Assembly (NCBI GenBank): GCA_002269645.1
Contig: NIVC01004780.1
Location: 1-35,122 of the forward strand
Direction of reading: 5' to 3'
DNA length: 35,122 nucleotides
Source of the DNA: Macrostomum lignano
Taxonomy: Eukaryota
Shown here: one piece after another, positions 1,138-31,762 of the stretch
Layout: each line of letters starts with the position of its first letter
Numbering within the stretch: position 1 is the first letter of the stretch
The notes under the pieces: generated by a model
The model's database searches: none
What the model saw: only the letters and a program-made list of their open reading frames with translations
Told to the model about the DNA's origin: nothing
Made by a program: the position numbers and the translations under genes

Positions 1138-1292
1138 TCAGACACAGCGCGACAACCAACAATCCTTTGACAAGGAAGGTGCGGACAAACAGCACTGCGG
1201 CAAACATGTGCACGCTGACTGAGAACGATGCTGTCACACTGACCAGCAGCATCAGGGTTGAACCGGCTATGAAGGCTGTGCGACGGCCGAAC
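1138..1292 (-). CDS. SLC22: SLC22 exon 3 (RFGRRTAFIAGSTLMLL...VALCL)
   Basis: cag|G acceptor and A|gtgagt donor, 155 nt. Completes the MFS motif A (D-R-F-G-R-R). Confidence 0.92.
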
Positions 1293-1304
1293 CTGGGCTT
1301 AGCG

Positions 1305-1348
1305 TTGGTTGATTGGATGATTGATTGATTGATTGATTGACTAGTTGG

Positions 1349-1405
<57 letters not shown>

Positions 1406-1545
1406 GTTTTGATTGATTGGTTGATTGATTGGTTGATTGACTGATTGATTGGTGTGTTGATTAATTGATTGGTTGATTGACTGATTGATTGATTGACTGC
1501 TTGATTGGTGGGTTGATTTGTTAATTTGTTGATTGATTGATTTGG
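1305..1545. repeat. (gatt)n microsatellite in SLC22 intron 2
   Basis: Fills most of the intron and abuts the exon-3 acceptor. Confidence 0.95.
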
Positions 1546-1662
1546 ATGTCAGGGTGCCACAACTTTGAAGAATATTTTGTGCTAAGTTTGCGACTTAATT
1601 TCATCCTGCTTTTGTCAATAACAAGTCAGTAAACACGGGATGCATATGACAATTAAGCAGAC

Positions 1663-1766
1663 CTATCCGACAATTGGCCGAAAGCGATGCCGCCAATGAA
1701 TGGGCCAACAAAGGTCAGACTCTTGACAACGGTGGCCACTATGGACTGCTCGCAGACCAGATCGAA
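1663..1766 (-). CDS. SLC22: SLC22 exon 2 (FDLVCEQSIVATVVKSLTFVGPFIGGIAFGQLSDR)
   Basis: cag|TTC acceptor and AG|gtctgc donor, 104 nt. Contains the WDLVC-like motif and G..G.LSDR, in frame with exons 1 and 3. Confidence 0.92.
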
Positions 1767-1819
1767 CTGCGGGTCGTGGTAGCGAATCTATTAAATATTG
1801 CGGGGGCTTCTGCTGCCTT

Positions 1820-2832: not shown

Positions 2833-2909
2833 AAAAATAGTTAATACGGATACTTTCGAGTTTTAAAAGTTCCACTCAAAGCAAACATTAACCCGGCCTA
2901 TATAGCCAC

Positions 2910-3305
2910 CTCGGTCACCACCGTGGCGCCGAACTCATTGCCAAAGCGACGTCCATCGAGGCAGTCTTCGACGCCGAGCGCCCGGCAGGCGTAGGTCAGT
3001 CCGGCACCACCGTCCGCCGGCTGCAGGCAGGCCTCCGACAAGTTCAACACCAGCCTGCTGCACGCACTGCCGGGCTCCAGAGCAGCGGACTCCAGCTCAG
3101 CTTGAGTAGTGTAATTCGGTGACTGACGCAGGTAGTTCACAGTGTCATTGTCCAGCAGGCAGCGGTGGCCGGGCGTGCTGACCAGGAAGAACAAGTCCAA
3201 CTGGTTCATGCCGATGAACATAATCGGCACTACGACCAGGCCGAACTGAATTCTTTGAAATCGGCCGAAACCGCCGATTTTCGCTAGCAGCTCGTCGAAC
3301 TTCAT
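2910..3305 (-). CDS. SLC22: SLC22 organic cation/anion transporter, coding exon 1 (TM1 plus Cys-containing extracellular loop)
   Basis: MKFDELLAKIGGFGRFQ is the typical SLC22 N-terminus, followed by HRC and ..TVVTE. ATG at 3305-3303, donor GAG|gtggct at 2909, phase 0. Confidence 0.93.
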
Positions 3306-3630
3306 TTGCCTGCACCGTCGGGTTGCTGAGGGCTTTCGCTCCTGCTGCGGTCTGCGAGAACTTTAATTAAAACTAGTGCTTAAAATTTAAGACACTTGCA
3401 GATCTTTTCGTCCCTTGTGAACAAATTTATCGGCGCCTTATCGCTAGAAAAATTTAATAAGTAATTTTTGTGCAAATCTCTAAAGTTCACTGAGAGCACA
3501 GTTTTGGCCTTCTTGTTTGTGTACAGAGAACACATTTGCGGGGCATTGAGATTCTTGCTCACGCTGCCGTAACCAGATCAATTTCAGAAATTCAGAAATC
3601 AATTTTGAGCGTCAGACTGTTTATTCTCTT

Positions 3631-4345
3631 CACCCCAGCCCCTTCCCCCAGCCCCTTCACCCCAGCCCCTTCACCCCAGCCCCTTCCCCCCAGCCCCTTC
3701 ACCCCAGCCCCTTCACCCCAGCCCCTTCACCCCAGCCCCTTCCCCCCAGCCCCTTCCCCCAGCCCCTTCACCCCAGCCCCTTCACCCCAGCCCTTAACCC
3801 GAGCCCCTTCACCCCAGCCCCTTCACCCCAGCCCCACCCCAGCCCCTTCCCCCCAGCCCCTTCACCCCAGCCCCTTCACCCCAGCCCCTTAACCCGAGCC
3901 CCTTCACCCCAGCCCCTTCACCCCAGCCCCTTCACCCGAGCCCCTTCACCCCAGCCCCTTCACCCAGCCTCTTCACCCCAGCCCCTTCACCCCAGCTCCT
4001 TCACTCCAGCTCCTTCACCCCAGCCCCATCATCCCAGCCCCTTCACCCCCAAGCCCTTCAACCCAGCCCCAAGTCACTTAAGCCCCCTCACCCCAGCCCC
4101 TTCACCCCAGCCCCTCACCCCAGCCCCTTCACCCCAGCCTCTTCACCCGAGCCCCTTCACCCCAGCCCCTTCACCCAGCCCCTCACCCCAGCCCCTTCAC
4201 CCCCAAGCCCTTCAACCCAGCCCCAAGTCACTTAAGCCCCTCACCCCAGCCCCTTCACCCCAGCCCCCTCACCCCAGCCCCTTCACCCCAGCCTCTTCAC
4301 CCGAGCCCCTTCACCCCAGCCCCTTCACCCCAGCCCCACTCACCG
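3631..4345. repeat. 14-bp C-rich minisatellite (ccccagccccttca)n, G4-prone on the minus strand
   Basis: About 50 units, with an internal higher-order duplication (ccccaagtcacttaag occurs twice). Confidence 0.95.
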
Positions 4346-5121: not shown

Positions 5122-5346
5122 TCAGGTGGATTGCATTCTGTCCAACTCTTTCTGCTCTTTGCTTTTATTTCGCTCCTCGAACTTCACCCGGTTTTTGATG
5201 ATCCGCTCGATCACGCTATAGGCGGTCATGTCGTTGCCGCTGTCCACTTCGCGGTACAGCCCGAGCCGCTTCGCCTCGGAGTAGGGGTCGCTGCCGTCTG
5301 GGCACGGCTTCACGGGCGTGCGGACTCCATGGATCACGTAGTCCAC
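5122..5346 (-). CDS. PCYT2: PCYT2 exon 10, last (VDYVIHG...DGSDPY...RMQST stop)
   Basis: cag|GTG acceptor and TGA at 5124-5122. The ten exons sum to 1098 nt, giving 365 aa plus stop, all in frame. Confidence 0.96.
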   Translation of the reverse strand: MDYVIHGVRTPVKPCPDGSDPYSEAKRLGLYREVDSGNDMTAYSVIERIIKNRVKFEERNKSKEQKELDRMQST

Positions 5347-5355
5347 CTGCGGCGG

Positions 5356-6020
5356 GTGAGATTGTGTTAGACACTTGCTAGACAGGACATGTCTCAGTGT
5401 GAGATTATGTTGGACACTTGCTAGACAGGACATGTCTCAGTGTGAGATTATGTTGGACACTTGCTAGACAGGACATGTCTCAGTGTGAGATTGTGTTGGA
5501 CACTTGCTAGATAGGACATGTCTCAGTGTGAGATTGTGTTAGACACTTGTTAGATAGGACATGTCTCAGTGTGAGATTGTGTTAGACACTTGCTAGATAG
5601 GACATGTTTCACAGAGAGATTATGTTAGACACTTGCTAGATAGGACATGTCTCAGTGTGAGATTATGTTGGACACTTGCTAGATAGGACATGTCTCAGTG
5701 TGAGATTATGTTGGACACTTGCTAGATAGGACATGTCTCAGTGTGAGATGACACTTGTTAGATAGGACATGTCTCAGTGTGAGATTATGTTGGACACTTG
5801 CTAGATAGGACATGTCTCAGTGTGAGATTATGTTGGACACTTGCTAGACAGGACATTTCTCAGGGTGAGATTATGTTAGACACTTGCTAGATAGGACATG
5901 TCTCAGTGTGAGATTGTGTTAGACACTTGCTAGACAGGACATTTCTCAGGGTGAGATTATGTTAGACACTTGCTAGATAGGACATGTCTCAGTGTGAGAT
6001 TGTGTTAGACACTTGTCAGA
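5356..6020. repeat. 43-bp minisatellite in PCYT2 intron 9, containing the branch-point region
   Basis: gtgagatt(g/a)tgtt(a/g)gacacttgctagacaggacatgtctcagt, about 15 copies. Confidence 0.95.
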
Positions 6021-6169
6021 TAAATGATTACAGCAATCCACGGTTTAAAAAAAAACAAAAAAATATTTTCTAAGGTGTCAGGTGATCTGTTGAGAACTTT
6101 TTAGTGCACATGAGCTTCGACAATAACTCAAGATAAAAACAGAAACGGGAAATTTGCGCTGCTGCATAC

Positions 6170-6235
6170 CTTCAGGTGTTTCATGAGCTGCTCGCTAATC
6201 TTGAAGGGGGCATCGATGACCACATTGGACACGTA
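6170..6235 (-). CDS. PCYT2: PCYT2 exon 9 (YVSNVVIDAPFKISEQLMKHLK)
   Basis: cag|TAC and AAG|gtatgc boundaries. Contains the YV..VVI.AP motif. Confidence 0.95.
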
Positions 6236-6365
6236 CTGCGGGGCCAAGCGAGTTTTTGAAAGGTAAACCGCTCAGATAAAATGCTGTGTAAAAATTCTAT
6301 GTAGAGATAAGAGGCCTATTAAAATGTCAAGCCTAAATTTAACTAAAGGCCAAAAGGCAGTAGCT

Positions 6366-6705
6366 GAACTAATGACTGGGGCAGTGGCTGAGCAAAGGAC
6401 TGGAGGAGTGGCTGAGCAAAGGACTGGGGCAGTGGCTGAGCAAAGGACTGGGGCAGTGGCTGAGCAAAGGACTGGGGGAGTGGCTGAGCAAAGGACTGGG
6501 GCAGTGGCTGAGCAAAGGACTGGGGCAGTGGCTGAGCAAAGGACTGGGGGAGTGGCTGAGCAAAGGACTGGGGCAGTGGCTGAGCAAAGGACTGGGGGAG
6601 TGGCTGAGCAAAGGACTGGGGCAGTGGCTGAGCAAAGGAATGGGGGGCAGTGGCTGAGCAAAGGACTGGGGGAGTGGCTGGGGCAGTGGCTGAGCGAAAG
6701 ACTGG
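6366..6705. repeat. 24-bp minisatellite in PCYT2 intron 8
   Basis: ggactggggcagtggctgagcaaa, about 13 copies. Confidence 0.95.
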
Positions 6706-6724
6706 GGGCTCATAAAGGACTCAC

Positions 6725-6879
6725 TCTGCAGGCGAGGACGGAGAGCACTCTCTCGAACATGGTCATGATTGGGTAGTTGTAGCCCCTGTACCAGTTCACT
6801 ATTTGATCCGAGTGAATGCCAATAATCACGTAAGTGGCCATTGAGTAGCACTTTTCCAGAAAGTCGATGTGGCCAACAT
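6725..6879 (-). CDS. PCYT2: PCYT2 exon 8 (HVGHIDFLEK...ERVLSVLACR)
   Basis: cag|AT and AGA|gtgagt boundaries. Contains HVGH and NYPIM...ER.LSVLACR. Confidence 0.96.
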
Positions 6880-7074
6880 CTGCAATATAATTGAATGAAC
6901 CAAATAAGATTACTCGCTGAGCACAGACTGAGCACAGACAAACACGCCAATACTGTACGCAGGCACGCACTCATACACACGCTTATACAAGGTGTACAAC
7001 GGTCCATCGTCAGCACGTACACTCTCTGTGCCTTTGGGGGTTAGCCTTCATGGCTGTATATCGCACGACAACTC

Positions 7075-8190
7075 GCCGCCCCCACCCCACATCAGACGCA
7101 ACTCACGGAATAGATCAAAGGCGCCGCCCCCCCCTACCCACAGCGGACGCAACTCACGGAATAGATCAAAGGCACCGCCCACCCACTCCACATCAGACGC
7201 AACTCACGGAATAGATCAAAGGCACCGCCCACCCAATCCACATCAGACGCAACTCACGGAATAGATCAAAGGCACCGCCCACCCACTCCACATCAGACGC
7301 AACTCACGGAATAGATCAAAGGCGCCGCCCCCCCCGTACCCACAGCAGACGCAACTCACGGAATAGATCAAAGGCATCGCCCACCCACTCCACAGCAGAC
7401 GCAACTCACGGAATAGATCAAAGGCGCCGCCCACCCACTCCACATCAGACGCAACTCACGGAATAGATCAAAGGCGCCGCCCACCCACTCCACATCAGAC
7501 GCAACTCACGGAATAGATCAAAGGCGCCGCCCACCCACTCCACATCAGACGCAACTCACGGAATAGATCAAAAGCGCCGCCCCCCCCCCTACCCACAGCG
7601 GACGCAACTCACGGAATAGATCAAAGGCATCGCCCACCCACTCCACAGCAGACGCAACTCACGGAATAGATCAAAGGCGCCGCCCCCCCGTACCCACAGC
7701 AGACGCAACTCACGGAGTAGATCAAAAGCGCCGCCCCCCTACCCACATCAGACGCAACTCACGGAATAGATCAAAGGCGCCGCCCCCCCCCGTACCCACA
7801 GCAGACGCAACTCACGGAATAGATCAAAAGCGCCGCCCCCCCCGTACCCACAGCAGACGCAACTCACGGAATATATCAAAAGCGCCGCCCCCCCCTACCC
7901 ACAGCAGACGCAACTCACGGAATAGATCAAAAGCGCCGCCCCCCTACCCACAGCAGACGCAACTCACGGAATAGATCAAAGGCGCCGCCCCCCCCGTACC
8001 CACATCAGACGCAACTCACGGAATAGATCAAAGGCGCCGCTCCCCCGTACCCACAGCAGACGCAACTCACGGAATAGATCAAAAGCGCCGCCCTCCCTAC
8101 CCACAGCAGACGCAACTCACGGAATAGATCAAAAGCGCCGCCCCTCTACCCACAGCAGACGCAACTCACGGAATAGATCAAAGGCGCCGC
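7075..8190 (-). repeat. ~50-bp minisatellite made of the PCYT2 exon-7 end plus its 5' splice site
   Basis: Sense-strand unit gcggcgcctttgatctattcc|gtgagttgcgtctg(c/a)tgtgg... I counted 22 gtgagttgc donors, including the genuine one at 8169. Confidence 0.97.
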
Positions 8191-8308
8191 ACACGAAGGC
8201 AATTTTCTCGCCAGGCTCAGGCGCCCGGCCAGTGGAGAACTCCTTCAGTTGCTGAGTGGTTGGCACGAACTGACAGGTAGCGGTGTAGGGACTGCGCGAT
8301 GTTGCCGC
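8170..8308 (-). CDS. PCYT2: PCYT2 exon 7 (AATSRSPYTATCQFVPTT...VCGAFDLF)
   Basis: ttttttacag acceptor and TTC C|gtgagt donor. C+AT forms the His of the second HxGH motif. Confidence 0.95.
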
Positions 8309-8935
8309 CTGTAAAAAACGGGACACGCAGTTAATGTAAATTGGCGATAAAGACTGTCGGTATAAATAATTCTAGAATAAAAAATAGAATTTAATTAAAT
8401 TATTTACAAACAGACTGCCGAATCGAAAATAGAAATCGGAAATCACCAACAACTGTTGAGGGAGCGAACGAAAAACGTTTGAACAGTAATTTTGAATTTT
8501 CATTAATTAGTTTCCATAAGCTGTTTGTTAATACATCTTTTAGTTTCGTATATACTCGTATCAAAACGATTTTTTTCGCGAAAAATTCTAGACATACGAA
8601 ACAATAACAATGTTAAATTATAATATGTTCGTAGCTTTCCGAATAAACTGGTCGAAAACTCCGAAACCTATGCTATGAAGTTAAACAATAATTCAGTTTT
8701 AAAAAGGCATATTGCTTTGAATAACAATTAGCAAACTTTCGTCGTTTTTTATATAAACGCTCTAAAGATGGACTAACGAAAACAGTTGAAATCAAGTAGC
8801 CCAAGTTACATGGTCTCCAGATTGAGTCTAAAAATATTGAAAACAACACACAAATTACTAAATAGCCTAAAACTGCTCATTTTGTAGTTGTGAGCTATTC
8901 TAACGTTTATGGTCCTAGTGTTAGACATTAAGTGA

Positions 8936-9890
8936 CGCCGTGTGATCGGTATTGTCTGCCGTGTGATCGACATTGTCTGCTGTGTGATCGACATTGTCTG
9001 CCGTGTGATCGACATTGTCTGCCGTGTGATCGACATTGTCTGCTGTGTGATCGACATTGTCTGCTGTGTGATCGACATTGTCTGCCGTGTGATCGGGATT
9101 GTCTGCCGTGTGATCGACATTGTCTGCCGTGTGATCGACATTGTCTGCCGTGTGATCGACATTGTCTGCTGTGTGATCGACATTGTCTGCTGTGTGATCG
9201 ACATTGTCTGCCGTGTGATCGACATTGTCTGCTGTGTGATCGACATTGTCTGCTGTGTGATCGACATTGTCTGCCGTGTGATCGGGATTGTCTGCCGTGT
9301 GATCGACATTGTCTGCCGTGTGATCGACATTGTCTGCCGTGTGATCGACATTGTCTGCTGTGTGATCGACATTGTCTGCTGTGTGATCGACATTGTCTGC
9401 CGTGTGATCAGGATTGTCTGCCGTGCGATCGACATTGTCTGCCGTGTGATCGACATTGTCTGCTGTGTGATCGACATTGTCTGCTGTGTGATCGACATTG
9501 TCTGCCGTGTGATCGACATTGTCTGCTGTGTGATCGACATTGTCTGCTGTGTGATCGACATTGTCTGCTGTGTGATCGGGATTGTCTGCTGTGTGATCGG
9601 GATTGTCTGCTGTGTGATCGACATTGTCTGCCATGTGATCGACATTGTCTGCCGTGTGATCGACATTGTCTGCCGTGTGATCGACATTGTCTGCTGTGTG
9701 ATCGACATTGTCTGCTGTGTGATCGGGATTGTCTGCTGTGTGATCGGGATTGTCTGCTGTGTGATCGACATTGTCTGCCGTGTGATCGACATTGTCTGCC
9801 GTGTGATCGACATTGTCTGCTGTGTGATCGACATTGTCTGCCGTTTGATCGGGATTGTCTGCCGTGTGATCGGGATTGTCTGCTGTCTGA
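8936..9890. repeat. 21-bp minisatellite in PCYT2 intron 6
   Basis: gtgtgatcgacattgtctgc(c/t), about 45 copies. Confidence 0.97.
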
Positions 9891-10030
9891 GTGGGACTGT
9901 GTCACGTGATCAGAATCGCAGGTCAAGCAATCCGGATTGTTTGCCCACCTGATTAAGGCACTACCGAATGGAACGATGCAATTTAGACTAATTTCTAAAC
10001 TCCTGGTCAGTCGATAAGAGGCCTGAATCA

Positions 10031-10231
<201 letters not shown>

Positions 10232-10439
10232 TCACTTTGGTGTAAGCACACTCTTACAGTTCGAGTTGGCCCTCATGAACGAGCTCCGGATTAATCCGGC
10301 CTCTCAAGGAGTCGAACAGGGGGTCATTTGGCCTTTACATATTGAGCTAAAGGGCCTCAACAAGCAAACTTGAATCGTAAAAATTATGGCAAAAATACCT
10401 GACTCACATTAACGAATTCGCAATTAAATTAGACTCGAA

Positions 10440-12750
10440 TTTACAACTTACAATCCTCAAACTTCACAGTCCCCACAATTCACAATCCCTAAACTTCAGA
10501 ACCTCCAAAGTTCACAACCCAAGCTTCACAATCCCCAAAATTCACAACCGCAAGCTTCACAACCATTGAAATTCACAACCTCCAAAATTCACAACCGCAA
10601 GCTTCACAACCATTGAAATTCACAACCTCCAAAATTCATAACCCAAAGCTTCACAACCCTCAAAATTCATAATCTCCAAAAATTTACAACATTCAAAATT
10701 CACAACCTCCAAAATTCACAACTCCAAGCTTCACAAACCCCCAAGCTTCACAAACCCCCAAGCTTCACAACCTCCAAAATTCACAACCTCCAAAATTCAC
10801 AACTCCAAGCTTCACAAACCCCCAAGCTTCACAACCTCCAAAATTCACAACCTCCAAAATTCACAACTCCAAGCTTCACAAACCCCCAAGCTTCACAACC
10901 TCCAAAATTCACAACTCTAAGCTTCACAAACCCCCAAGCTTCACAAACCCCCAAGCTTCACAACCTCCAAAATTCACAACCTCCAAAATTCACAACTCCA
11001 AGCTTCACAAACCCCCAAGCTTCACAACCTCCAAAATTCACAACTCTAAGCTTCACAAACCCCCAAGCTTCACAACCTCCAAAATTCACAACCCCAAGCT
11101 TCACAAACCCCCAAGCTTCACAAACCCTCAAGCTTCACAACCTCCAAAATTCACAACCCCAAGCTTCACAACTCCAAGCTTCACAAACCCCCAAGCTTCA
11201 CAACCTCCAAAATTCACAACCCCAAGCTTCACAAACCCTCAAGCTTCACAACCTCCAAAATTCACAACCCCAAGCTTCACAAACCCTCAAGCTTCACAAC
11301 CTCCAAAATTCACAACTCCAAGCTTCACAAACCCCCAAGCTTTCACAATCTCCGAAATTCACAACTCCAAGCTTCACAAACCCCCAAGCTTCACATTTTT
11401 TATTAGAAACAGGGGGGTTGTGTGCACCCTGGCGCACTTTAAGCGACATAGGCACACAACCGGCGAGAGGCATTACTGCCCATTCCGCCGACTCCCCTGA
11501 GCAGGCAGACAAGCGCGCGGATACGTACGCAGTCACACACTCACACAGGAGTGTACAGCGGCCCTAACTTTATATTATCGTTAGGCATGTACACTTCACT
11601 GCGCCTTGGGGGGTTGGCTCTCAAGGCCGTTAATTGCACGAGCAGAGCCAAGTCGAGATTCCAATTCAGCCCCAAATTAATGTGACTGCACTTGGAATCG
11701 AGCCTGGGTCGCTGGCACACCAGAGCAGCTGCGCTACCGCTGGGCTACGGCCCCCCCAAGCTTCACAACCTCCAAAATTCACAACTCCAAGCTTCACAAA
11801 CCCCCAAGCTTCACAACCTCCAAAATTTACAACTCCAAGCTTCACAAACCTCCAAGCTTCACAACCTCCAAAATTCACAACCCCAAGCTTCACAACCCCC
11901 AAGCTTCACAAACTCCAAAATTCACAAACTCCAAAATTAACAACCTCCAAAATTTACAACGCCAAGCTTCACAAACCCCCAAGCTTCACAACCTCCAAAA
12001 TTCACAACTCCAAGCTTCACAAACCCCCAAGCTTCACAACCTCCAAAATTCACAACTCCAAGCTTCACAGACCCCCAAGCTTCACAACCTCCAAAATTCA
12101 CAACTCCAAGCTTCACAAACCCCCAAGCTTCACAACCTCCAAAATTCACAACTCCAAGCTTCACAACCTCCAAGCTTCACAACTCCAAGCTTCACAAACC
12201 CCCAAGCTTCACAACCTCCAAAATTCACAACTCCAAGCTTCACAAACCCCCAAGCTTCACAACCTCCAAAATTCACAACTCCAAGCTTCACAACCTCCAA
12301 GCTTCACAACTCCAAGCTTCACAAACCCCCAAGCTTCACAACCTCCAAGCTTCACAACTCCAAGCTTCACAAACCCCCAAGCTTCACAACCTCCAAAATT
12401 CACAACTCCAAGCTTCACAAACCCCCAAGCTTCACAACCTCCAAAATTCACAACTCCAAGCTTCACAACCTCCAAGCTTCACAACTCCAAGCTTCACAAA
12501 CCCCCAAGCTTCACAACCTCCAAAATTCACAACTCCAAGCTTCACAAACCCCCAAGCTTCACAACCTCCAAAATTCACAACTCCAAGCTTCACAAACCCC
12601 CAAGCTTCACAACCTCTAAAATTCACAACCTCCAAAATTCACAACCCCAAGCTTCACAACCCCCAAGCTTCACAACCTCCAAAATTCACAACCCCAAGCT
12701 TCACAACCCCCAAGCTTCACAACCTCCAAAACTCACAACCCCAAGCTTCA
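10440..12750. repeat. Composite 15-17-bp satellite with a ~48-bp higher-order unit in PCYT2 intron 5, split by a SINE
   Basis: Alternating cacaacctccaaaatt, cacaactccaagctt and cacaaacccccaagctt. Degenerate left edge. Confidence 0.95.
11396..11755 (-). mobile_element. tRNA-derived SINE family A, intact-looking copy inserted in a satellite
   Basis: A box TAGCCCAGCGG (11747-11737), B box GGCTCGATTCC (11704-11694), 3' taataaaaaa tail. Flanked by ccaagcttcaca on both sides. Confidence 0.85.
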
Positions 12751-13241
12751 GATTCCGTAGTTTTATCCACAAACTTTTACAATCACCAACTGTTACCTCA
12801 AAATTGAAGGTTAGACAAAAAATCGGGGGCTGTAAAACTTGGAAGTTTATAAAGTGAAAAGTCTTGGAGGAATGTATAATTGGGGGTTTGTGAAAGTACC
12901 CAATAGACTCGATATAAAACAGTAAGACACTATAAAGAATTCTCGGATTATTAGTAGATCGAAAATATATCCTAATTGCTGACTTACTTAAACAGGCCAT
13001 TATTGAAGGTCAAAGGAAATAGAAAGTTACTAGCGAGAGTTGCTGTAGCAAATTAGGAGGCGATCAACGCACAAAAAAGCACAGCTAGGGTATCTGATTC
13101 TTCAGACTGAACCCTTGCACACTCAGATGTACGCGTTTCAATGTAACAAAGAATGAGTTATGCTTGCAAGAATACACTGAAACGATACAAGAACAACTGC
13201 AATTCTGCATGAAATTTGAGGAATCGAACCCCGGGACTCAC

Positions 13242-13308
13242 CTGTACTTTCCGGCCGCCTTCACCAAGTGATAGGTGTCGTGGCCATCAGCCGAAGTGGT
13301 GATATCGT
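13242..13308 (-). CDS. PCYT2: PCYT2 exon 5 (DDITTSADGHDTYHLVKAAGKYR)
   Basis: tag|AC and AG|gtgagt boundaries. Contains DIT...DG.DTY..VK.AG.Y. Confidence 0.96.
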
Positions 13309-13347
13309 CTAAAATGATTAACAATCCAAGTTTTGCTAACACAATCA

Positions 13348-13521
<174 letters not shown>

Positions 13522-13536
13522 TTAATAAGCCACTCA

Positions 13537-13710
<174 letters not shown>

Positions 13711-13768
13711 TTAAAAGTCTCGTTTGAAATAGAATATTTAGTAGAATATGGAAGATATGGAAACATAC

Positions 13769-13811
13769 CTGCCGAATGGCATTTGCATGGCCGAAGTGAA
13801 CCATGTCAAAA
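13769..13811 (-). CDS. PCYT2: PCYT2 exon 2 (FDMVHFGHANAIRQ), first HxGH motif
   Basis: tttttttcag acceptor and CAG|gtatgt donor. HFGH is the cytidylyltransferase motif. Confidence 0.96.
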
Positions 13812-13998
13812 CTGAAAAAAATAAGTGTTATACCAGAATGTACCTATGGCTTATGCTCAGCAAGATATTGAACACACAACTTGAAAATATTTTATAAGAA
13901 AGCATTATAGAAAAAATGGTCAAAAAATCAACTTCAAAAATAAAAACTTTTAAAATTAAAAAAGTTTGAAGATCAATTGCAAAAATCTCTTCTCTACA

Positions 13999-16019
13999 TC
14001 TCTACATATAAAAATCAAAACTCTGTGTGTGTGTGTGTGTGTGGACAATTTTGATCGCTATGGACTCCCAAACCACTCAACCAAATTACACCAAACTTTA
14101 CACCCACCCTAAACTCACTAAGGAAAATGTCTTAGGCTACCTTTTAATTTCCTAGACTCAAGTCTTCCTACCTAAAAGTACAAAAAACTGCTCAAAATGC
14201 GCGATTTTTTCACTAAATCCTCCATAGCGCCGCTCCACTTCTACCGATTCTCTTCAAATTTGACACAGAATTTTAACTATTTTGACACAATCATGTAAAA
14301 TTTCAAATCTCAAAGTTAATCCTGAAAGCCGCTGCTGCGTTTTAAAGTTAGGCTGTTTTTTTCAGCGAGCAACCACCCCAACCTCCGCCCGCCTGCCTCT
14401 CTTTCCCGATCTGGGCCCAGATGTGTAAAAGGGTTTCAAAATTGACTAACTTTCAGCTGCCATAAGTTTGCTCCAAGTAAAGCGATTGACTTCAAACTTG
14501 ACACAATTCTTCATTGACTTATTCTCTGTCTAAATGTAAAGTTTCAACTCTCTAACTCAATCAGAAAGAAACTGTAAACATGTAAGTTTGTCTGCTTTTT
14601 CTGTTGTTGTGCCACTCACTCACTCATTCCCCCAGAGCCAGACGAAGGGTCAGGCGATAGGGCTCAATGTACATAGCGAATGTACAGTGTTTTGGAATAA
14701 CTTTATTTAATAGCCTTCTCTGCACCCGCGAGTGGAGAGGCTACGTTTAGCCATAACAGTTTAGTGAGAAATTCTAACCACTGCCCTCCCCTCTGTATTG
14801 GCAAACTCTGCAGCAGTTTAACAGTGGATGGCAATTGGCAAATCGAGGCAATCCAGCATGGTTTGTAAAAGCGAAAGATTTATGAAAAGGCGATGCGATG
14901 CAATGACAACCCTACTAAATTAGGCACACCATGGAAATTTTAAGTTTCTCTTAAAGTAAACTTTGAAATTTAAATGTCCTAAGAAATGCTATTTCCTTGG
15001 TTGTTAGACTGATGCAGACTGCAGTGGAGCTGAAATACACAAATTCCTTTCAGGGCTGCAAATTGGCAAGAAAATGACGTGATCAAAGCATGAGAACAGC
15101 GATGAGAGTAGTACGTCCCACAAACTGGCTTTCGAAGCAGGAATGGCAGACTTTTACTTCAAAAGCCAGATAAAGAATCCAGCTTATGTGCGGGCCAGAT
15201 GAGAGTGGAAAGGAGAAGGAATAGACTATTAGAAGAGAGGAGGGCGAGAGGGGATGAGAAAACATGGAATATAAGAGGAGAGACAAGTGGTGAGGAGAGA
15301 GCAGAGAAGAAGGGAGGAAGAAGTGAGAGGAGGGGAGAAAGGAGGGAGAGGAAAGAGTAAAGGTGAGAAGAGGGGAGATATGAGACAGAGGATCGATGAG
15401 AGGAGAGTAGAGAAGAGTGAGAAGAGAGTAGAGATGAGAGAGCAGAAAGAAGATGACAGAGGGTCAAGAGGAGAGAGAGATTAGAGAGGAGAGAGTAGAA
15501 AGGATAGAAAAGAGAGGAGATAAGAGGGAGAGAAGGGGTGAGAAGAGAAGAGATAGAGATAAGATAGGGGTGTAAGAAGAGGGGAGAAAGGAGAGATGAG
15601 AGAGTAAAGGGAAGAGGAGGAAGAGGAAAGAGATGAGATTGTAGAGATGAGACAGATGAAAGGAGAGATGAGAGAGTAAAGATGAGAGATGAGGTGAGAG
15701 GAGAGTGCAGAGAGACGAGAGAAGATAATAGAGGAGAGAGAGTATAGAAGAGGGAAAGAAAAGAAGAGAGGAGTAAGGAAAGAGAGGAGTCAGAAGAGGT
15801 GAAGAGAAGAGTACAGAGGAGATAAGTGAGAGAACGTATAGAGAGTAAAGATGACAGATGAGAGAGCAGAGATGAAACAGACGAGAGATGGGAAGTAGAG
15901 AGAACAGAGGAGAGATAAGAGAGAAGAGATTACAGAGACTAGAGGAGAGAGGAGAGAGGGAGAGAGAAGAGGAAACAGGAGAATGAAGAGGGGAGAGAGT
16001 AGAGGAGAAGAGAGATGGG

Positions 16020-16104
<85 letters not shown>

Positions 16105-17001
16105 GAGCAGAGAGAAACGAGAAGAGATAAGAGAGAAAAGATAAAATAAGAGAAAGGAGAGATAAAAGCAGACAAGAGAGAAGAGAGGTGAGGGAAGAGA
16201 CGAGTGACGAGGGGAGAGAGAAGAGATAAAACAAGAAAAGAGATGAGAGAAAGAGAGAGAGGAAAGAGGTGAGAGAAGAGACGAGAGAAGAGGGGAGAGA
16301 GGAGAGAGAGAGGAAAGAGGAGAGAGGAGAGAGTTAAGAGAAGAGAGAAAAGAATAGAGAGGAGAAGGAAGACGAGAGAAGAGGAGAGAGGAGAGAGAGA
16401 GAAAGAGAAAACGAAAAAGTAGAGAGGAGAGAGGAGAGGAGAGAGAAAGAAAAGAAGAGATGAGATAAGAGATATGAAAGAGAAGAGAGATGAGGGAAGA
16501 TACGAAAGAAGATAGGAGAGAGGAGAGGAGAGAGAAAACGAAAGAGTAGAGAGGAGAGAGGAGAGGAGAGAGAAAACGAAAAGTAGAGAGGAGACAGGAG
16601 AGAGAGAGAAGAGAGAAGAGAGATAAGAGAGATGAAAGAGAAGAGAGATGAGGGAAGATATGAGAGAAGAGAGGAGAGAGAGAGAGGAGAGAGGAAACAG
16701 AAGAACGATAGAAATTTTAAAGGATCCAAGGGACATAGGGAGAGTCAGGGAGAGGCCAGATTTGCCAATACATGTTTTAGAGTCAGACAGACATTGCCTG
16801 ACATTCTGTGAGTAACCCAGCCAACAATATCAATGTTTGCTTCAAATCCTAATTTTACACTAATGTGTTCATTTTATGTCTACCTCTATCCTACTAACTA
16901 TTAATTTGTTTGTGTATGGCCTTAGATTTCAGAATACATGCAAAAGTAGTTCCGGGGATTGGAATTCCCCGGGTTCAAAATCCGCGGGTTTCAACAGCTT
17001 G
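13999..17001 (+). mobile_element. Non-autonomous Helitron-like element, copy 1 (~3.0 kb)
   Basis: 5' A|TCTCTACATATAAAAATC followed by a (tg)n run. 3' GC hairpin at 16952-16972, then CTTG. Homologous along its length to 17002-19994. Confidence 0.72.
15200..16755. repeat. GA-rich polypurine tract inside Helitron copy 1, with pure (GA)n near 16025-16100
   Basis: About 1.5 kb of almost only A and G on the plus strand. Confidence 0.95.
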
Positions 17002-19994
17002 TCTACATATAAAAATCAAAACTCTGTGTGTGTGTGTCTGTGGACAAATTCGTTCGCTATGGACTCCCAAACCACTCAACCAAATACCACCAATTTTTGC
17101 ACCCACCCTAAACTCACTACGGAAAATGTCTTAGGCTACCTTTAAATTTCCTAAATTTGAGTCTTCCTACCTAAAAGTACAAAAAACTGCTCAAAATGCG
17201 CGATTTTTTCACTAAATCCTCCATAGCGCCGCTCCACTTCTACCGATTCTCTTCAAATTTGACACAGATAATCTTTAACTATTTTGGCACAATCATGTAA
17301 AATTTCGAGTATCAAAGTTAATCCTGAGCGGTGCTGTGCGCTTTTAAAGTTAGGCTGTTTTTTTCAGCGTAGCAACCACCCCAACCTCCGCCCGCCTGCC
17401 TCTCTTACCCGATCTGGGCCCAGATGTGTAAAAGGGTTTCAAAATTGACTAACTTTCAGCTGCCATAAGTTTGCTCCACGTAAAGCGATTGACTCCCAAC
17501 TTGACACAATTCTTCATTGACTCATTCTCTATCTAAATGTAAAGTTTCAACTCTGTAACTCAACCGAAAAAGAAACTGTAAGCATGTGAAGTTTGTCTGC
17601 TTTTTCTTTTGTTTGTGCCACTCACTCACTCATTCCCCCAGAGCCAGACGAAGGGTCAGGCGATAGGGCTCAATGTACATAGCGAATGTACAGTGTTTTG
17701 GAATAACTTTTTAATAGCCTTCTCTGTACCCCCGCGAGTGGAGGCGTGGAGTCGGTGGAGAGGAGAGAGTTTAGCGAGAGATTCAAACCACTGTCGTCTG
17801 TATAGACACATCAGTTAAACAAGGATGGCAAATCAAGGCGATGTGGGATGGTTTGTAAAAATAGCAAAAAAATTAATGAATAACTGATTACAATGCAAAC
17901 TAAATTAGTTACACCATGCAAATTTTAACATTAAGATTCGCATAAGGTACTTTAAAATTTAAATGGCCTCCTAAGAAATGCGTATTTCCATGGTTGTTAG
18001 ACTGCTGCAGACTGTGGTGGTGGAGCTGGAGATACACAAATTCCTCTCAGGGCTGCTAATTGGCCAGAAAGATGACGTGATTAAAGCATGAGAAATGATA
18101 ACAACCATGAGAGTACTACGTCCCACAAACTGGCTTTCGAAGCAGGGATCGGCAGATTTTTATCTCAATGGCCAGATAAAGAATCCAGCTCATGGCTGCG
18201 GGCCAGATAAGAGTGAAAAGGAAAAGGAATAGACTATTAGAAAGGGAGGAGGGGCGAGAGGGGGATAAGAGAAAAGATAGAAGACAACAGGAGAGACGAG
18301 GGGGTTGAGGAGAGAGCAGAGAATATGGGACGAAGAAGCGAGAGGAGGGGAGAGAGAAGGGAGAGGAAATAGTAGAGGTGAGAAGATGGAGAGAGAAGGG
18401 GGAGATGAGACAGAGGATCGATGAGAGAGGAGAGTGGAGAAGAGTGAGAAGAGATGAGAGATGAGAGAACAGAGAGGCAGATGAGAGAGGATCGAGAAGA
18501 GAGATTAGAAAGGATAGAGAATAGAGGAGATAAGAGGGGGAGAGAGGAGTGAGAAGAGAAGGAGATAAGAGATGAGAGAGAGAGTTGAGAAAGAAGAGAG
18601 GAGAAAGGAGAGATGATAGAGTAAAGGGAAGAGGAGGAGAGAGGAAAGAGATGAGATTGTAGAGATGAAGGAAGAGAGAGCAGAGTGCAGAGAGACGAGA
18701 GAAAAGAATACGAGTAGAGGGGAGAGAGTATAGAAGAGGGAAGAGAAAAGAGAAGTAAGGAAAGAGAAGAGTCAGAAGAGGGGAAAGAGAAGAGTACACA
18801 GTAGAGAGGAGAGTAGAGATGACAGAAGAGAGAGGGGAATGAGAGAGCAAAGATGAGAGTAAACAGACGATATAAGAGAGGAGAGAGGAGAGTGGAGAGA
18901 GAAGAGAGAAGACAAGAGAGGGAGAGTATAGAAGAGAGAAGAGAAGAGACGAGAAGAAAGAAGAAAGGAAAGAGAGTCCTGAGTCAAAAAGGGGAAGAGA
19001 GGAGTACAAGGGGAGAGAGGTGAGAGAACATATGAGAGTAAAGATGACAGATGAGAGAGGGGAGATGAGAGAGCAGAAACGAGAAGTGAACAGACGAGAG
19101 ATGGGAGAGTAGAGAGAAAGAGGAGAGATAAGAAATAAGAGATGAGAGGTGGAGACAAGGGAGAGATGAGAAGTGAGTGAGGAGAGAGGAGGGGAAGGGG
19201 GAGAATCGAGATGACGGGAAATTGGTGAAAAGGGCGAGAAAGGAGAGGAAAGAGGGGAGAGATTAGAGAGAAGAGAGATAGGACAGGAGAGAGCAGAGAG
19301 AAGAGAGGAGAGAGAGAGAGGGGGGAGTCGAGAGAGAGCAGAGAGAAATGAGAAAAGATAAGAGAAAGAGAAGATAAAAAAAGAGAAATGAGAGATAAGA
19401 GAGCAAAGACGAGAGAGAAGGGAGGTGAGGTAAGAGACGATAGAAGGGATGAGAGGAGAGAGTGGACAGAGGAGAGGAGAGAGTTGAGAGAAGAGAGGAA
19501 AAAGGAGAGAGTAGAGATGAGGGGAGCGTTGAGAGAGGGTAGAGTAAGGAGTGAGAAGAGGGTAGAGGGAAGAGGGAAGAGAGAGTAGAGAGCAGAGAGA
19601 AATGAGAAGAGATAAAAGAGGAGAAAGGAGATATGAGACCAGAGACCAGAGAGAAGAGAGGAGAGGAGAGAGAAAATAATAGAGGGGAAAGGGAAGAGAT
19701 GAGAGAAGAGGGGAGAGAGGACAGAGGAGAGAAGAAAGAAGAAAGAGGAGAGAAGAGGACAAAGGCCAGAGTTTGCTTGAAATTCTTGATTTGCTTGAAG
19801 CACCCCAGCCAACAATATCAATGCTTGCTTCAAATCCTAATTTTATATGAATGTACACTCTATTTTATGTTTAACTCTATCCTAACTATTAGCAAGTTTT
19901 TGTTTGAGTTTGACCTCAGTTTTAGAATACATGCAAAAATAATTCCAGGGAATAAAGTTCCCTGGGTTCAAAATCTGCAGGTTTCAACAGCTTG
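17002..19994 (+). mobile_element. Non-autonomous Helitron-like element, copy 2, head-to-tail with copy 1
   Basis: Starts TCTACATATAAAAATC immediately after the CTTG of copy 1. Ends with hairpin 19945-19965 then CTTG|T. No TSD. Confidence 0.72.
18205..19765. repeat. GA-rich polypurine tract inside Helitron copy 2
   Basis: About 1.5 kb, homologous to 15200-16755. Confidence 0.95.
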
Positions 19995-20085
19995 TATAAT
20001 ATAAAAGGAAAACTCTTTAGCTTATATAACAATAATCTATAAATAGCCTTTAGATAACTTTTATTGCTATTTATCATTTTCACTA

Positions 20086-20446
20086 TATATATAGAGGCAA
20101 GGGGTTGTGTGCACATTGGCGCACTTTAAGTGACATAGGCACACAACTGGCAAGAGGCATTACTTGCCCATTCCACCGACTCCCCTGAGCAGGCATACAA
20201 GCGCGCAGATATGTACGCAGGCACACACTCACACAGGAGTGTACAGCGGCCCTAACTTAAATTTATCGTTAGGCATGTACACTTCACTGCACCTTGGGGG
20301 GCTGGCTCTCAAGACTAGTAATTACACGAGCAGAGCCAAGCCGAGATTTCAATTCAGCCCCAAATTAATGTGACTGCACTTGGAATCAAGCCAGCCTGGG
20401 TCACTGGCATACTGAGCCTATGCTAGACTGCTAGGCTATGGCCCCC
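20086..20446 (-). mobile_element. tRNA-derived SINE family A, second and more decayed copy
   Basis: Aligns end to end with 11396-11755. (TA)n tail. 13-bp TSD atcattttcacta at 20073-20085 and 20451-20463. Confidence 0.87.
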
Positions 20447-20942
20447 TATCATCATTTTCACTAATAAGTAGTTTAACTTAAGATCTAGGATTAATTTAAA
20501 ATTAACTTCAAAACCTCACTGAAGTAGCTTTCAACTAAATTCTACAAGTCTATTATGTAAGAAAAATATATAAAATGAGAATTGAGTGACATTATTGAAA
20601 TATAGGCCACAGTAACTTTTTCTTTGCCTTTGCTTTATAAGATATTTTGTAGGAGATATCAACTCCTACAAAATTTATGCATTGAATATGAAATTGAGCA
20701 ATAAAGATAATAAATTCTGGATAAATATTTGTCTATATATGCTACTACTAGATGTAGGTTATTGAAAATTCAGTACTTCTAGCAAATTCAGTATGAAAAT
20801 CTATGGAACTCTATGAAATCTATGAATCACGAAAATTAAAGTCAAACCGAGATTGAAACTTTAGCAAATAGCCCTAAATTATGAAAAATATAGCCTAGTT
20901 TAGTATAAACATAATCAACCAGGGAACCAGTGAGACCCTTAC

Positions 20943-21004
20943 CAACCGTCCACCCAGACTCGTATTTGTTTCTTCTTTTCGCTTGCTGAATTTTCAAATG
21001 CCAT
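20943..21004 (-). CDS. PCYT2: PCYT2 coding exon 1 (MAFENSASEKKKQIRVWVDGC)
   Basis: RVWxDGC motif. Donor TG|gtaagg. Phase matches exon 2 (TG+T = Cys). Confidence 0.92.
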
Positions 21005-23790: not shown

Positions 23791-24189
23791 TAGGCTACAT
23801 ACCTACAATAATGGCTTAAGAATACCTGTGTGTAACATTCTATTATAAATATACTAGTTCAAGAAGGAACAAGTTAAGCTAATGCCACTTGCAACTATTT
23901 ACAACTTTGGGGCTTATGAAATAAAAGAAAATAATATGGAAATTAAACTTTCACTGCACAGCTATGCAAAAATATACCAGTATAGCATGCTAAAGTGTAA
24001 TAAATTAAAAGAATGATAATCTTCACTGCCCCAGATCAAATGCAATCATTGATTGGGTGATAAAAAAGTGATTTTTTGCCAGGAAATAGGCCTCCAAAAA
24101 CTTAATCTTTGAGCCTTATGTCCTGCTATATTACTGTGGTCCTTGACTAGCATCAGTGCATTAGATCTAAATTACCCAATTTTGATGCC

Positions 24190-24479
24190 ATGGGCGTCGA
24201 CATCTGCCACAAGAATGACCGCAAGGTGCGCCGCACCAATCCAAAATCCGACGATGTCTATCTGCGCCTGCTGGTGAAACTCTACCGATTTCTGGCCCGC
24301 CGGACTGGCGCCAAGTTTAACAAAATCATCCTGCGCCGCCTGTTCATGAGCCGGGCCAATCGCGGCCCCCTGTCTCTGGCCCGCCTTGGCCGCATGCTGC
24401 GCAAGCCAAATCGGGAGGGTCGCATTGTTGTCACAGTTGGCACAGTTACTAACGATTCCCGGGTGCAGACAGTGCCGAG
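24190..24479 (+). CDS. RPL18: 60S ribosomal protein L18 (eL18), exon 1
   Basis: [39 protein letters not shown] is unmistakable eL18. Likely donor is AG|gtttgt at 24480; the alternative is TTT|gtgttg at 24484. Confidence 0.95.
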
Positions 24480-24587
24480 GTTTGTGTTGTTTGTTTAACT
24501 TCAGTGCTTATACTAGTAATGTTTGCCGCACCCCCTGTTGGGGAGGCAACAAATAACGGAATAATGAATTTGAATCGCATTTCGCAT

Positions 24588-24897: not shown

Positions 24898-24955
24898 ATA
24901 AATTACAGACTGCACTTACGCTGCACTCTCCCGGCCTCCTCTCCGCCAAATCCAG

Positions 24956-25227
24956 GTGACCCTGTGCGCGCTCCGCGTAACCGAGAAGGCCCGCGCCCGG
25001 CTGCTAGCTGCCGGCGGCGAGATCATCACCTTCGACGAGCTGGCCAGACGGGCCCCAAAGGCCAGAACACGCTGCTGGTGCAGGGCACGAGGAAGCGGGC
25101 CGCCCAGCGGCATTTCGGCCGGCCGCCGGGAGTGCCGCACTCGCACACTAAGCCGGTGGTTCGGTCCAAGGGTCGCAAATTTGAGAAGGCCCGCGGCCGC
25201 CGGGCTTCGCGCGGATTCACCAACTAA
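24956..25227 (+). CDS. RPL18: RPL18 exon 2, with an apparent frameshift at 25060-25061 (sequence error or pseudogene)
   Basis: cag acceptor at 24953-24955. LCALRVT..AR..AGG.I.TFDEL..APK is in one frame and [38 protein letters not shown] stop is in another. Confidence 0.9.
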
Positions 25228-25320
25228 TTGTCAAATTGATACAAGAGAGACCGTTCGTTTGATTATAATTGGCCTGGTTGGTGTTTGGTGCGCGCTGTTC
25301 AATGATTTTGATGGCTGCTG

Positions 25321-31666: not shown

Positions 31667-31723
<57 letters not shown>

Positions 31724-31762
31724 GCCTGTCTGTCTGTCTGTCTGTCTTAGTGTCTTAGTGCC

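What the first reader, a model, noticed from the sequence alone, without database searches (positions are those of the whole stretch)
7075..8190. PCYT2 intron 7 is an array of 21 copies of its own 5' splice site, all downstream of a premature stop
Seen: the ~49-53-bp unit contains the last ~21 exonic nt (encoding GAFDLF) and the donor gtgagttgc. I counted 21 extra copies, 19 with an exon side identical to the real donor at 8169. Reading on past the real donor gives ...DLFRELRLLWVEGRRF and then TGA at 8131-8129, inside the first extra unit and just before the second donor (8121|8120). Use of any extra donor therefore makes a PTC transcript that cuts the enzyme at its second HxGH motif. Established: PCYT2 is generally regarded as the rate-limiting step of the CDP-ethanolamine pathway, and duplicated donors compete during splicing. 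From memory, a C-terminally truncated inhibitory mouse Pcyt2 isoform has been described. Inference: array length could act as a heritable dial for unproductive splicing or NMD, or as a U1 snRNP sink. It could equally be a tolerated slippage product.
Basis: partly seen in the sequence, partly recalled or inferred. Interest (0 to 1): 0.85.

Follow-up and report, generated by a model that had tools for sequence, protein, structure and literature searches.

The report
Tandem splice-donor array in flatworm PCYT2
A 50-bp piece straddling the end of exon 7 of a flatworm phospholipid-synthesis gene is copied 22 times in tandem, leaving 21 spare splice-donor sites in the intron; the array is real, but it looks like one of this genome's many intron minisatellites rather than a shown regulator.

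Summary
The window is a whole contig of Macrostomum lignano (assembly Mlig_3_7). On its minus strand lies a 10-exon, 365-aa PCYT2 gene. At 7074-8190 a 49-53-bp unit is repeated 22.1 times. Each unit carries the last 21 nt of exon 7 plus GTGAGTTGC. The real donor is at 8169 and 21 extra donors follow. Read-through hits TGA at 8131-8129. In all four genomic copies only the first donor keeps the frame open.

Tandem arrays make up 43% of the window. Every PCYT2 intron longer than 100 nt is 40-85% minisatellite. The paralogue's intron 7 holds an unrelated 52-bp array. The unit occurs nowhere else in the genome.

One copy, about 1% diverged, has 21 units in a different order, and its exon end carries a repeat variant (GCC to GCT, synonymous). 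So the array turns over by in-register exchange, which always rebuilds exon end plus donor. All deposited protein models use the first donor.

Most likely this is a tolerated slippage product whose spare donors are cryptic sites giving premature-stop (PTC) transcripts. I could reach no RNA data. It is a new, extreme example of a known kind. Interest is moderate.

The parts
5122..21004 (-). PCYT2 (ethanolamine-phosphate cytidylyltransferase) coding region with 10 coding exons: 21004-20943, 13811-13769, 13686-13555, 13479-13404, 13308-13242, 10169-10037, 8308-8170, 6879-6725, 6235-6170, 5346-5122. The product is 365 aa.
   Evidence: A tblastn guide plus splice sites placed by hand give one open frame. 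The product is 99% identical to the M. lignano model P0001, and identical to the partial model P0122 annotated on this very contig. Pfam finds CTP_transf_like twice.
8170..8308 (-). Exon 7 (139 nt), ending ...GGC GCC TTT GAT CTA TTC C. Its last 21 nt (8190-8170) form the first half of the first repeat unit.
   Evidence: GAFDLF is conserved in the paralogue, in a related species' transcript and in human PCYT2.
8161..8172 (-). Authentic 5' splice site TCC|GTGAGTTGC, with G(+1) at 8169.
   Evidence: It is the only donor that keeps the frame open into exon 8. All deposited M. lignano models use it: GAFDLF|HVGH. Positions +1 to +6 pair with the canonical 5' end of M. lignano U1 snRNA, AUACUUACCUG.
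7074..8190 (-). Minisatellite of 22.1 units of 49-53 nt. Each unit is the 21 exonic nt, then GTGAGTTGCGTCTG(C/A)TGTGG, then a G-rich tail. There are two main tail types: GGGTA(G/C)Gn and GGAGTGGGTGG.
   Evidence: In the 764-Mb assembly the unit is found only at the four PCYT2 loci.
7098..8123 (-). 21 extra (decoy) donors, G(+1) at 8120, 8070, 8019, 7967, 7918, 7867, 7815, 7762, 7713, 7662, 7612, 7559, 7509, 7459, 7409, 7359, 7307, 7257, 7207, 7157 and 7106. Positions -3 to +12 are the same in all of them.
8129..8131 (-). In-frame TGA reached by reading past the real donor. It lies upstream of every extra donor.
6880..7073 (-). Unique 3' part of intron 7, ending in the acceptor ...ttatattgcag.
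6725..6879 (-). Exon 8. It begins AT GTT GGC CAC, completing the His of the second HxGH motif (HVGH).

Best explanation
This is a locus-specific minisatellite. It arose when a 50-bp segment straddling the exon 7 / intron 7 junction was duplicated, probably by slippage between two GCGGCG words 50 nt apart. It then expanded by unequal exchange, as happened in every other long intron of this gene.

The array is in register with the junction. Any gain or loss of whole units therefore rebuilds an intact exon end followed by a donor, and the coding sequence survives the turnover.

The mRNA that makes enzyme is spliced from the first donor, the one nearest the exon. The 21 copies downstream are cryptic donors of equal intrinsic strength. 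Each time one is used, the product is a premature-stop transcript, which is expected to be degraded by nonsense-mediated decay (NMD).

The net effect is probably neutral to mildly costly splicing noise. The cost is buffered by several gene copies and a paralogue. This is not an evolved control device.

Shown here: the anatomy of the array, its origin from the exon junction, its turnover between copies, the premature-stop outcome, and the genomic context.

Inferred only: U1 binding at each unit, the strong preference for the first donor, NMD of the aberrant products, and neutrality.
For: 1. The array and the donor copies are real.

2. The locus lies on four contigs. C4780, C525 and C1920 share the same 22 units in the same variant order, yet C1920 differs from C4780 at other arrays. 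C441 differs by about 1% in unique flanking sequence. It has 21 units in a different order built from the same variants.

3. C441's array begins with the window's units 1-3, and its exon ends GCT instead of GCC, which is synonymous. The exon-proximal unit has therefore been exchanged. A related species' transcript has GCC, so GCC is the older state.

4. Context: 42.7% of the window lies in tandem arrays. Introns 1, 5, 6, 7, 8 and 9 are 40-85% array, each with its own unrelated unit. The three short introns have none.

5. The 72%-identical paralogue has the same intron position with a single donor and an unrelated 52-bp array, 13.6 or 49 copies depending on the contig.

6. The unit is not a dispersed repeat.

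7. Only donor 0 leaves the frame open, on all four contigs.

8. All deposited models use donor 0. The Mlig_3_7 annotation was built from RNA-seq-guided assemblies (PMC5730564).

9. In exons 2-10 the two diverged copies differ by 5 synonymous and 0 non-synonymous changes. The related species is 82% identical in nucleotides, and its protein falls in the same 90%-identity protein cluster. The gene is therefore under purifying selection and must be spliced productively.

10. PMC5730564 states that simple and tandem repeats make up 15% of this genome.
Against: No RNA reads could be examined, so how often each donor is used is unknown.

From memory (Eperon and colleagues, 1993 and 2000): in mammalian extracts, when several equally strong donors are all occupied by U1, the one nearest the acceptor is favoured. 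That rule predicts mostly unproductive splicing here, which would be far from neutral.

None of the 41 extra donors in the two array versions has decayed, and positions -3 to +12 never vary. A purely harmful or purely neutral element might be expected to show some dead copies. However, the test is not significant (p about 0.07), and homogenisation within arrays explains the pattern as well.

Unit number is similar in the diverged copies (21 and 22), which could hint at a constraint on length. The intron 9 array is equally stable, at 15.7 copies in all three contigs compared.
Confidence: 0.68

Rival explanations
1. The array is a tunable unproductive-splicing device. The extra donors compete with the real one, and a share of transcripts set by unit number goes to premature-stop isoforms. 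These isoforms are either degraded by NMD or make a 230-aa protein with one catalytic domain that inhibits the enzyme. Array length would then set PCYT2 output heritably.
For: The extra donors are identical to the real one from -13 to +12, and all give premature stops that lie upstream of at least two exon junctions. The truncated product keeps only the first CTP_transf_like domain. A truncated mouse Pcyt2 splice variant is published as a post-translational repressor (title in the reference list of PMC13565840). A human PCYT2-gamma isoform that retains part of an intron is classed as an NMD biotype (PMC9100777). No extra donor has decayed in any copy.
Against: Unit number differs by only one between the diverged copies, so there is little 'dial' variation to act on. 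The paralogue and all neighbouring introns show that arrays arise here without any link to splice sites. The invariance of the donor core is not significant.
Confidence: 0.1
2. The array acts positively, as a cluster of intronic U1 snRNP binding sites. The bound U1 could strengthen definition of exon 7. It could also protect the 1.3-kb intron from premature cleavage and polyadenylation. In this trans-splicing species, it could protect the exon 8 acceptor from spliced-leader trans-splicing.
For: U1 binding downstream of a natural donor enhances use of that donor in PAH exon 11 and with exon-specific U1 RNAs (PMC5933811). The real donor has a weak exon side (TCC), so it pairs with U1 only at +1 to +6. 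M. lignano trans-splices about 39% of its genes (PMC5730564). Each unit also carries a G-run about 20 nt after the donor; from memory, intronic G-runs are splicing enhancers in vertebrates.
Against: One or two such sites would be enough, and 21 are not explained. In the PAH case the effect falls off with distance. The paralogue manages with one donor of similar sequence. Nothing here tests U1 occupancy.
Confidence: 0.1
3. The array is an assembly artefact: long noisy reads were mis-stacked, or a short duplication was inflated.
For: The assembly is PacBio-based and redundant. The contigs differ in G-run lengths, as homopolymer errors would.
Against: Four contigs carry the array. Two clearly different versions exist (22 and 21 units in a different order), with matching flanks. 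C1920 and C4780 share the same 22-unit order although they differ at other arrays, so they are separate sequences. An array of 1.1 kb is well within the length of a single read.
Confidence: 0.02

Closest known systems
Internal tandem repeats at exon-intron boundaries (De Grassi and Ciccarelli 2009, PMC2812944); 'introns from tandem arrays' (Zhuo et al. 2007 PNAS, known to me by title only, not held in the library)
   Same: A tandem repeat whose unit overlaps an exon-intron junction multiplies splice signals. It can thereby create alternative or cryptic splicing patterns, and copy number differs between recent gene copies.
   Different: Those cases are human genes in segmental duplications. They are described as making novel introns or variable coding repeats. 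Here the array multiplies only the donor, 22 times, in a conserved single-function metabolic enzyme of a flatworm. No alternative product has been seen.
Ordinary intronic minisatellites (VNTRs)
   Same: Head-to-tail units of 10-100 bp, interspersed unit variants, a higher-order period (about 200 nt), copy number and variant order differing between alleles or copies, and G-rich units.
   Different: The first unit is half coding exon. The array is therefore anchored on a functional splice site instead of lying inside the intron.
Competing duplicated 5' splice sites in model pre-mRNAs (work of Eperon, Krainer, Hertel and colleagues; recalled from memory)
   Same: Identical donors in tandem compete for one acceptor, and position rather than sequence must decide the choice.
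   Different: Those are artificial constructs with two sites, tested in mammalian extracts or cells, where the site nearest the acceptor tends to win. Here there are 22 natural sites, and the deposited mRNA models use the one farthest from the acceptor.
Intronic U1-binding splicing enhancers and decoy splice sites (PAH intron 11, exon-specific U1 RNAs; PMC5933811)
   Same: Donor-like sequences downstream of the real donor that bind U1 without being used much.
   Different: These are single sites close to the exon, with a function shown by mutation. Here U1 binding and any effect are untested.
Unproductive splicing coupled to NMD, and truncated PCYT2 isoforms (human PCYT2-gamma, PMC9100777; mouse variant of Pavlovic et al. 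2014)
   Same: Retention or extension of an intron between the two catalytic domains gives a premature stop.
   Different: The mammalian isoforms come from ordinary intron retention, not from a repeated donor. Homology of the intron positions was not established.

Membership tests
Minisatellite / VNTR | Head-to-tail repeats of a 10-100 bp unit in many copies | tested here: met
   Period 50, 22.1 copies, 90% matches.
Minisatellite / VNTR | Copy number or internal variant order differs between alleles or copies | tested here: met
   22 units on C4780, C525 and C1920 against 21 units in a different variant order on C441. Whether these contigs are alleles or duplicated chromosome copies is not known.
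Minisatellite / VNTR | Of local origin, not a dispersed element | tested here: met
   The unit matches only the four PCYT2 loci in the 764-Mb assembly. Its exonic half is ancient coding sequence.
Tandem repeat at an exon-intron boundary that alters splicing | The unit overlaps an annotated splice junction and carries the splice signal | tested here: met
   21 exonic nt plus GTGAGTTGC in every unit.
Tandem repeat at an exon-intron boundary that alters splicing | Transcripts that use the repeated signals exist | not testable with these tools
   No RNA reads are available. Exact and homology look-ups for the read-through product found nothing.
Regulated unproductive splicing (alternative splicing coupled to NMD) | The alternative site gives a premature stop upstream of later exon junctions | tested here: met
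   All 21 extra donors do so, on all four contigs.
Regulated unproductive splicing (alternative splicing coupled to NMD) | The alternative isoform is made and responds to conditions or to NMD block | not testable with these tools
   This needs RNA-seq or RT-PCR.
Regulated unproductive splicing (alternative splicing coupled to NMD) | The element is conserved beyond what neutrality predicts | tested here: inconclusive
   The donor core -3 to +12 is invariant in 41 units, but p is about 0.07 once the hypervariable G-tail is set aside. The paralogue lacks the array. No genome of another Macrostomum species was reachable.
PCYT2 (ethanolamine-phosphate cytidylyltransferase) | Two cytidylyltransferase domains, each with an HxGH motif | tested here: met
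   Pfam PF01467 matches in two stretches, E = 5e-51. The motifs are HFGH and HVGH. Identity to animal PCYT2 is about 60%.

The most novel reading that the evidence does not exclude
The array is kept by selection as a rheostat or landing pad. In this reading, 21 U1-binding donor copies set, through their number, what share of PCYT2 pre-mRNA is spliced productively, or they protect and define the exon in a trans-splicing genome. Unequal exchange would then give heritable, stepwise changes in the output of the rate-limiting enzyme of phosphatidylethanolamine synthesis.
Probability: 0.1. Interest if true: 0.75.

Novelty: new member of a known kind. Interest (0 to 1): 0.35.

Why it matters
As a by-product of minisatellite inflation, the array is mainly a natural experiment in splice-site choice. 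It offers 22 donors, identical from -13 to +12 and spaced 50 nt apart, in a gene that must still be spliced correctly. The host animal can be made transgenic and treated with RNAi.

Which donor is used, and how much is lost to premature-stop products, would show whether this flatworm picks donors by order of transcription, by exon definition, or by nearness to the acceptor.

The array also shows how a minisatellite can sit on a coding junction without breaking the gene, because in-register exchange always restores the exon end. If array length turned out to control expression, this would be a clear case of a repeat-length allele tuning a metabolic enzyme through splicing. Nothing found here shows that.

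Tried and rejected
**Searches for a product of intron read-through or extra-donor use.**
- An exact look-up of the 230-aa truncated protein and of my 365-aa model found neither in the collection.
- A homology search with the 80-aa stop-to-stop frame across exon 7 and the first unit gave no hit.
- A search with residues 150-230 of the truncated protein returned only two M. lignano models, both with the normal junction.
- These negatives are weak.

**RNA structure that might hide the extra donors.** Exon 7 plus five units folds less well than shuffled controls (z = +2.3), so this idea is rejected.

**Rfam scan of the window.** No family reached its threshold.

**Constraint on array length.** The donor array has 22.1, 22.1 and 21.2 copies on the three contigs compared. 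Its neighbours run from identical (15.7 in all three) to very different (143 against 28). This is neither evidence for nor against constraint.

**Selection on the donor core within units.** Not significant.

**A dead gene copy.** Rejected. The frame is intact on the contigs, exons 2-10 show 5 synonymous and 0 non-synonymous differences between the diverged copies, and the models rest on RNA-seq.

**A dispersed repeat or transposon as the source of the unit.** Rejected.

**Papers.** The papers by Eperon and colleagues and by Zhuo and colleagues were not held in the library. What I say about them is from memory or from their titles.

**Genome-wide count of arrays spanning junctions.** Not attempted, because no annotation file is available to these tools.

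Full report
**What the window is.** The 35,122-base window is a complete contig (C4780) of the 764-Mb Macrostomum lignano assembly Mlig_3_7. A guide alignment plus splice sites placed by hand give a 10-coding-exon gene on the minus strand, from 21004 to 5122. It encodes 365 aa.

The product is 99% identical to the deposited M. lignano model P0001. It is identical over its whole length to the partial model P0122 annotated on this very contig, and about 60% identical to animal PCYT2 proteins. Pfam finds the cytidylyltransferase domain twice.

**The observation.**
- Tandem Repeats Finder reports one array at 7074-8190: period 50, 22.1 copies, 90% matches.
- GTGAGTTGC occurs 22 times on the minus strand, never on the plus strand, and nowhere outside the array.
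- Each unit is the last 21 nt of exon 7 (GC GGC GCC TTT GAT CTA TTC C), then GTGAGTTGCGTCTG(C/A)TGTGG, then a G-rich tail.
- The real donor has G(+1) at 8169. The 21 others run from 8120 to 7106.
- 19 of the 21 match the real site over the last 13 exonic nt, and 9 match over all 21.
- The junction splits the His codon of the second HxGH motif: GAFDLF|HVGH.
- Reading on gives ...RELRLLWVEGRRF and then TGA at 8131-8129.

**Is it real?** The same locus lies on three further contigs.
- C525 and C1920 carry the same 22 units in the same variant order. They differ only in G-run lengths.
- C1920 differs from the window at other arrays (36 against 45 copies in intron 6; 78 against 51 in the downstream 14-nt array). 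It is therefore a separate sequence.
- C441 differs by about 1% in unique flanking sequence. It carries 21 units built from the same variants in a different order.
- An artefact is very unlikely.

**Premature stops.** On all four contigs only the first donor leaves the frame open into exon 8. On C525 and C1920 the first unit is one G longer. The particular TGA is out of frame there, and the stop falls a little later. The premature-stop outcome therefore does not depend on the uncertain G-run lengths.

**How the array behaves.** C441's array starts with the window's units 1-3, and its exon 7 ends GCT rather than GCC. A transcript of a related species has GCC. So in one lineage the exon-proximal unit was gained or lost, and a repeat variant became the end of the exon. 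The change was tolerated because it is synonymous.

This is the structural point of interest. Because the array is in register with the junction, unequal exchange always rebuilds 'exon end plus donor'.

The array ends in GCGGCG followed by unique sequence. This fits a first duplication by slippage between two GCGGCG words 50 nt apart (inference). A partial last unit would look the same.

**Context.**
- 42.7% of the window lies in tandem arrays.
- Of the nine PCYT2 introns, the three short ones (75-95 nt) have none. The six longer ones are 40-85% array, each with a different unit.
- The 43-nt array of intron 9 runs to 9-10 nt from the acceptor and repeats a CTAAC branch-site-like word ten times.
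- The 72%-identical paralogue has intron 7 at the same position and phase with a single donor (TTTC|GTGAGTGTCC). It carries an unrelated 52-nt array that starts about 90 nt further in, with 13.6 copies on two contigs and 49 on a third.
- The genome paper gives 15% of the genome as simple and tandem repeats, and describes 180 Mb of near-identical redundancy (PMC5730564).
- The PCYT2 unit itself is found nowhere else in the genome.

The donor array is therefore one outcome of a general process that fills introns with minisatellites. With 18 junctions in about 8 kb of non-array gene sequence and six or more founding duplications, one of them straddling a junction is not surprising (my rough estimate, not a test).

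**Function.** I could not reach any RNA reads.
- Every deposited M. lignano protein model for this gene uses the first donor. The annotation was derived from RNA-seq-guided assemblies. That pipeline removed repeat-overlapping and non-coding isoforms, so it says nothing about rare products.
- Three searches for the read-through product found nothing.
- Exons 2-10 of the two diverged copies differ by five synonymous and no non-synonymous changes. The related species is 82% identical in nucleotides, and its protein falls in the same 90%-identity cluster. The gene is under purifying selection and must be spliced productively at a useful rate. That implies a strong bias toward the first donor (inference).
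- The M. lignano U1 5' end is canonical, and the donor pairs with it at +1 to +6. Every unit should bind U1 equally well by sequence.
- The RNA shows no fold that would hide the extra sites (z = +2.3).
- What sets the first donor apart is only its position and its upstream context. It is preceded by true exon, whereas each extra donor is preceded by a G-run. From memory of vertebrate work, such a G-run would act as a silencer if it lay inside an exon.

**For and against a selected role.** No extra donor has decayed in either array version, and positions -3 to +12 never vary in 41 units. With only seven variable columns outside the G-tail, this is not significant (p about 0.07), and homogenisation within arrays explains it equally well. 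Unit number is similar in the diverged copies (21 and 22), but so is that of the intron 9 array, while other arrays differ up to five-fold. The paralogue shows that the junction works with one donor.

**Comparison with what is known.**
- Tandem repeats overlapping exon-intron boundaries that change splicing have been described in human segmental duplications (PMC2812944). They are also the subject of Zhuo et al. 2007, which I know by title only.
- Donor-like U1 sites downstream of a real donor can enhance its use (PMC5933811).
- Truncated or NMD-class PCYT2 isoforms exist in mammals (PMC9100777; the Pavlovic 2014 title).
- The present case is a new and extreme member of the first kind: only the donor is repeated, 22 times, in a conserved metabolic gene of a flatworm.
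- It passes the tests for a minisatellite and for a boundary-spanning repeat. The defining tests for regulated unproductive splicing could not be run.

**Verdict.** The gene, the junction and the premature-stop logic are correct. The regulatory reading is unsupported. The best explanation is a tolerated, locally generated minisatellite whose spare donors are cryptic sites (confidence about 0.7). Its value is as a natural test of donor choice, and a handful of RT-PCR or long-read experiments would settle the matter.

Noticed in passing
window 5356-6022 (minus strand, intron 9 of PCYT2): A 43-nt minisatellite of 15.7 copies runs to 9-10 nt from the exon 10 acceptor AG. It repeats a branch-site-like CTAAC word ten times, so a 3' splicing signal is also multiplied in this gene. 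Copy number is the same on the three contigs compared (window, C1920, C441).
   Followed up: partly
whole window, e.g. 1-439, 730-1016, 1837-2835, 3628-4337, 8937-9890, 10450-12750, 25552-26621, 30339-31858, 33922-34858: 42.7% of the contig is tandem arrays with many unrelated units of 4-56 nt. All PCYT2 introns over 100 nt are 40-85% array, and the three introns of 75-95 nt have none.
   Followed up: partly
window 14008-14567 and 17007-17570 (intron 1 of PCYT2): A tandem segmental duplication of about 3.0 kb, 91-95% identical. Each copy is followed by a long GA-rich array (15292-16695 and 18307-19757).
   Followed up: partly
window 11452-11682 and 20134-20370 (plus-strand frames): Two similar stretches lie in introns 5 and 1; their translations share ...IPPTPLSR.TSA.I.TQ.HTHTGVYSGPN...GMYTSL.LGGLALK... 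They look like copies of a dispersed element. Not identified.
   Followed up: no
window 24151-24498 (plus strand), continuing near 24900-25230: A ribosomal protein L18e (RPL18) exon (Pfam Ribosomal_L18, E = 1e-39). This is the neighbouring gene upstream of PCYT2, on the opposite strand.
   Followed up: partly
window 2901-3362 and about 1140-1790 (minus strand): A further gene lies downstream of PCYT2. By eye its first exon (MKFDELLAKIGGFGRFQ...) looks like an SLC22-type transporter, but Pfam gave no significant hit on the exon fragments. A (TCAA)n array at 1305-1542 abuts one of its exons.
   Followed up: partly
window 28450-29514 (minus strand): An open frame of 354 aa with a signal-peptide-like start (MALHRLLLAFVASVLLC...) and no Pfam match.
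   Followed up: partly
G000 contigs C1212, C1213, C1214, C3672, C3830, C4525, C4853: At least 27 U1 snRNA genes, nearly all identical, lie in same-strand clusters spaced about 11-22 kb apart. Their 5' end is the canonical AUACUUACCUG.
   Followed up: partly
L013 (C922:64000-68600) against L014 and L015 (C163, C1087): The paralogue's intron 7 array of 52-nt units has 49 copies on one contig and 13.6 on the other two. This is a 3.6-fold length difference between copies of the same gene.
   Followed up: partly
L010 (C525:245000-254900): This copy has 188 N and a 1-nt length difference in exon 7. The deposited model on this contig is a 174-aa fragment starting inside exon 7. This is probably an assembly error rather than a broken gene.
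   Followed up: no
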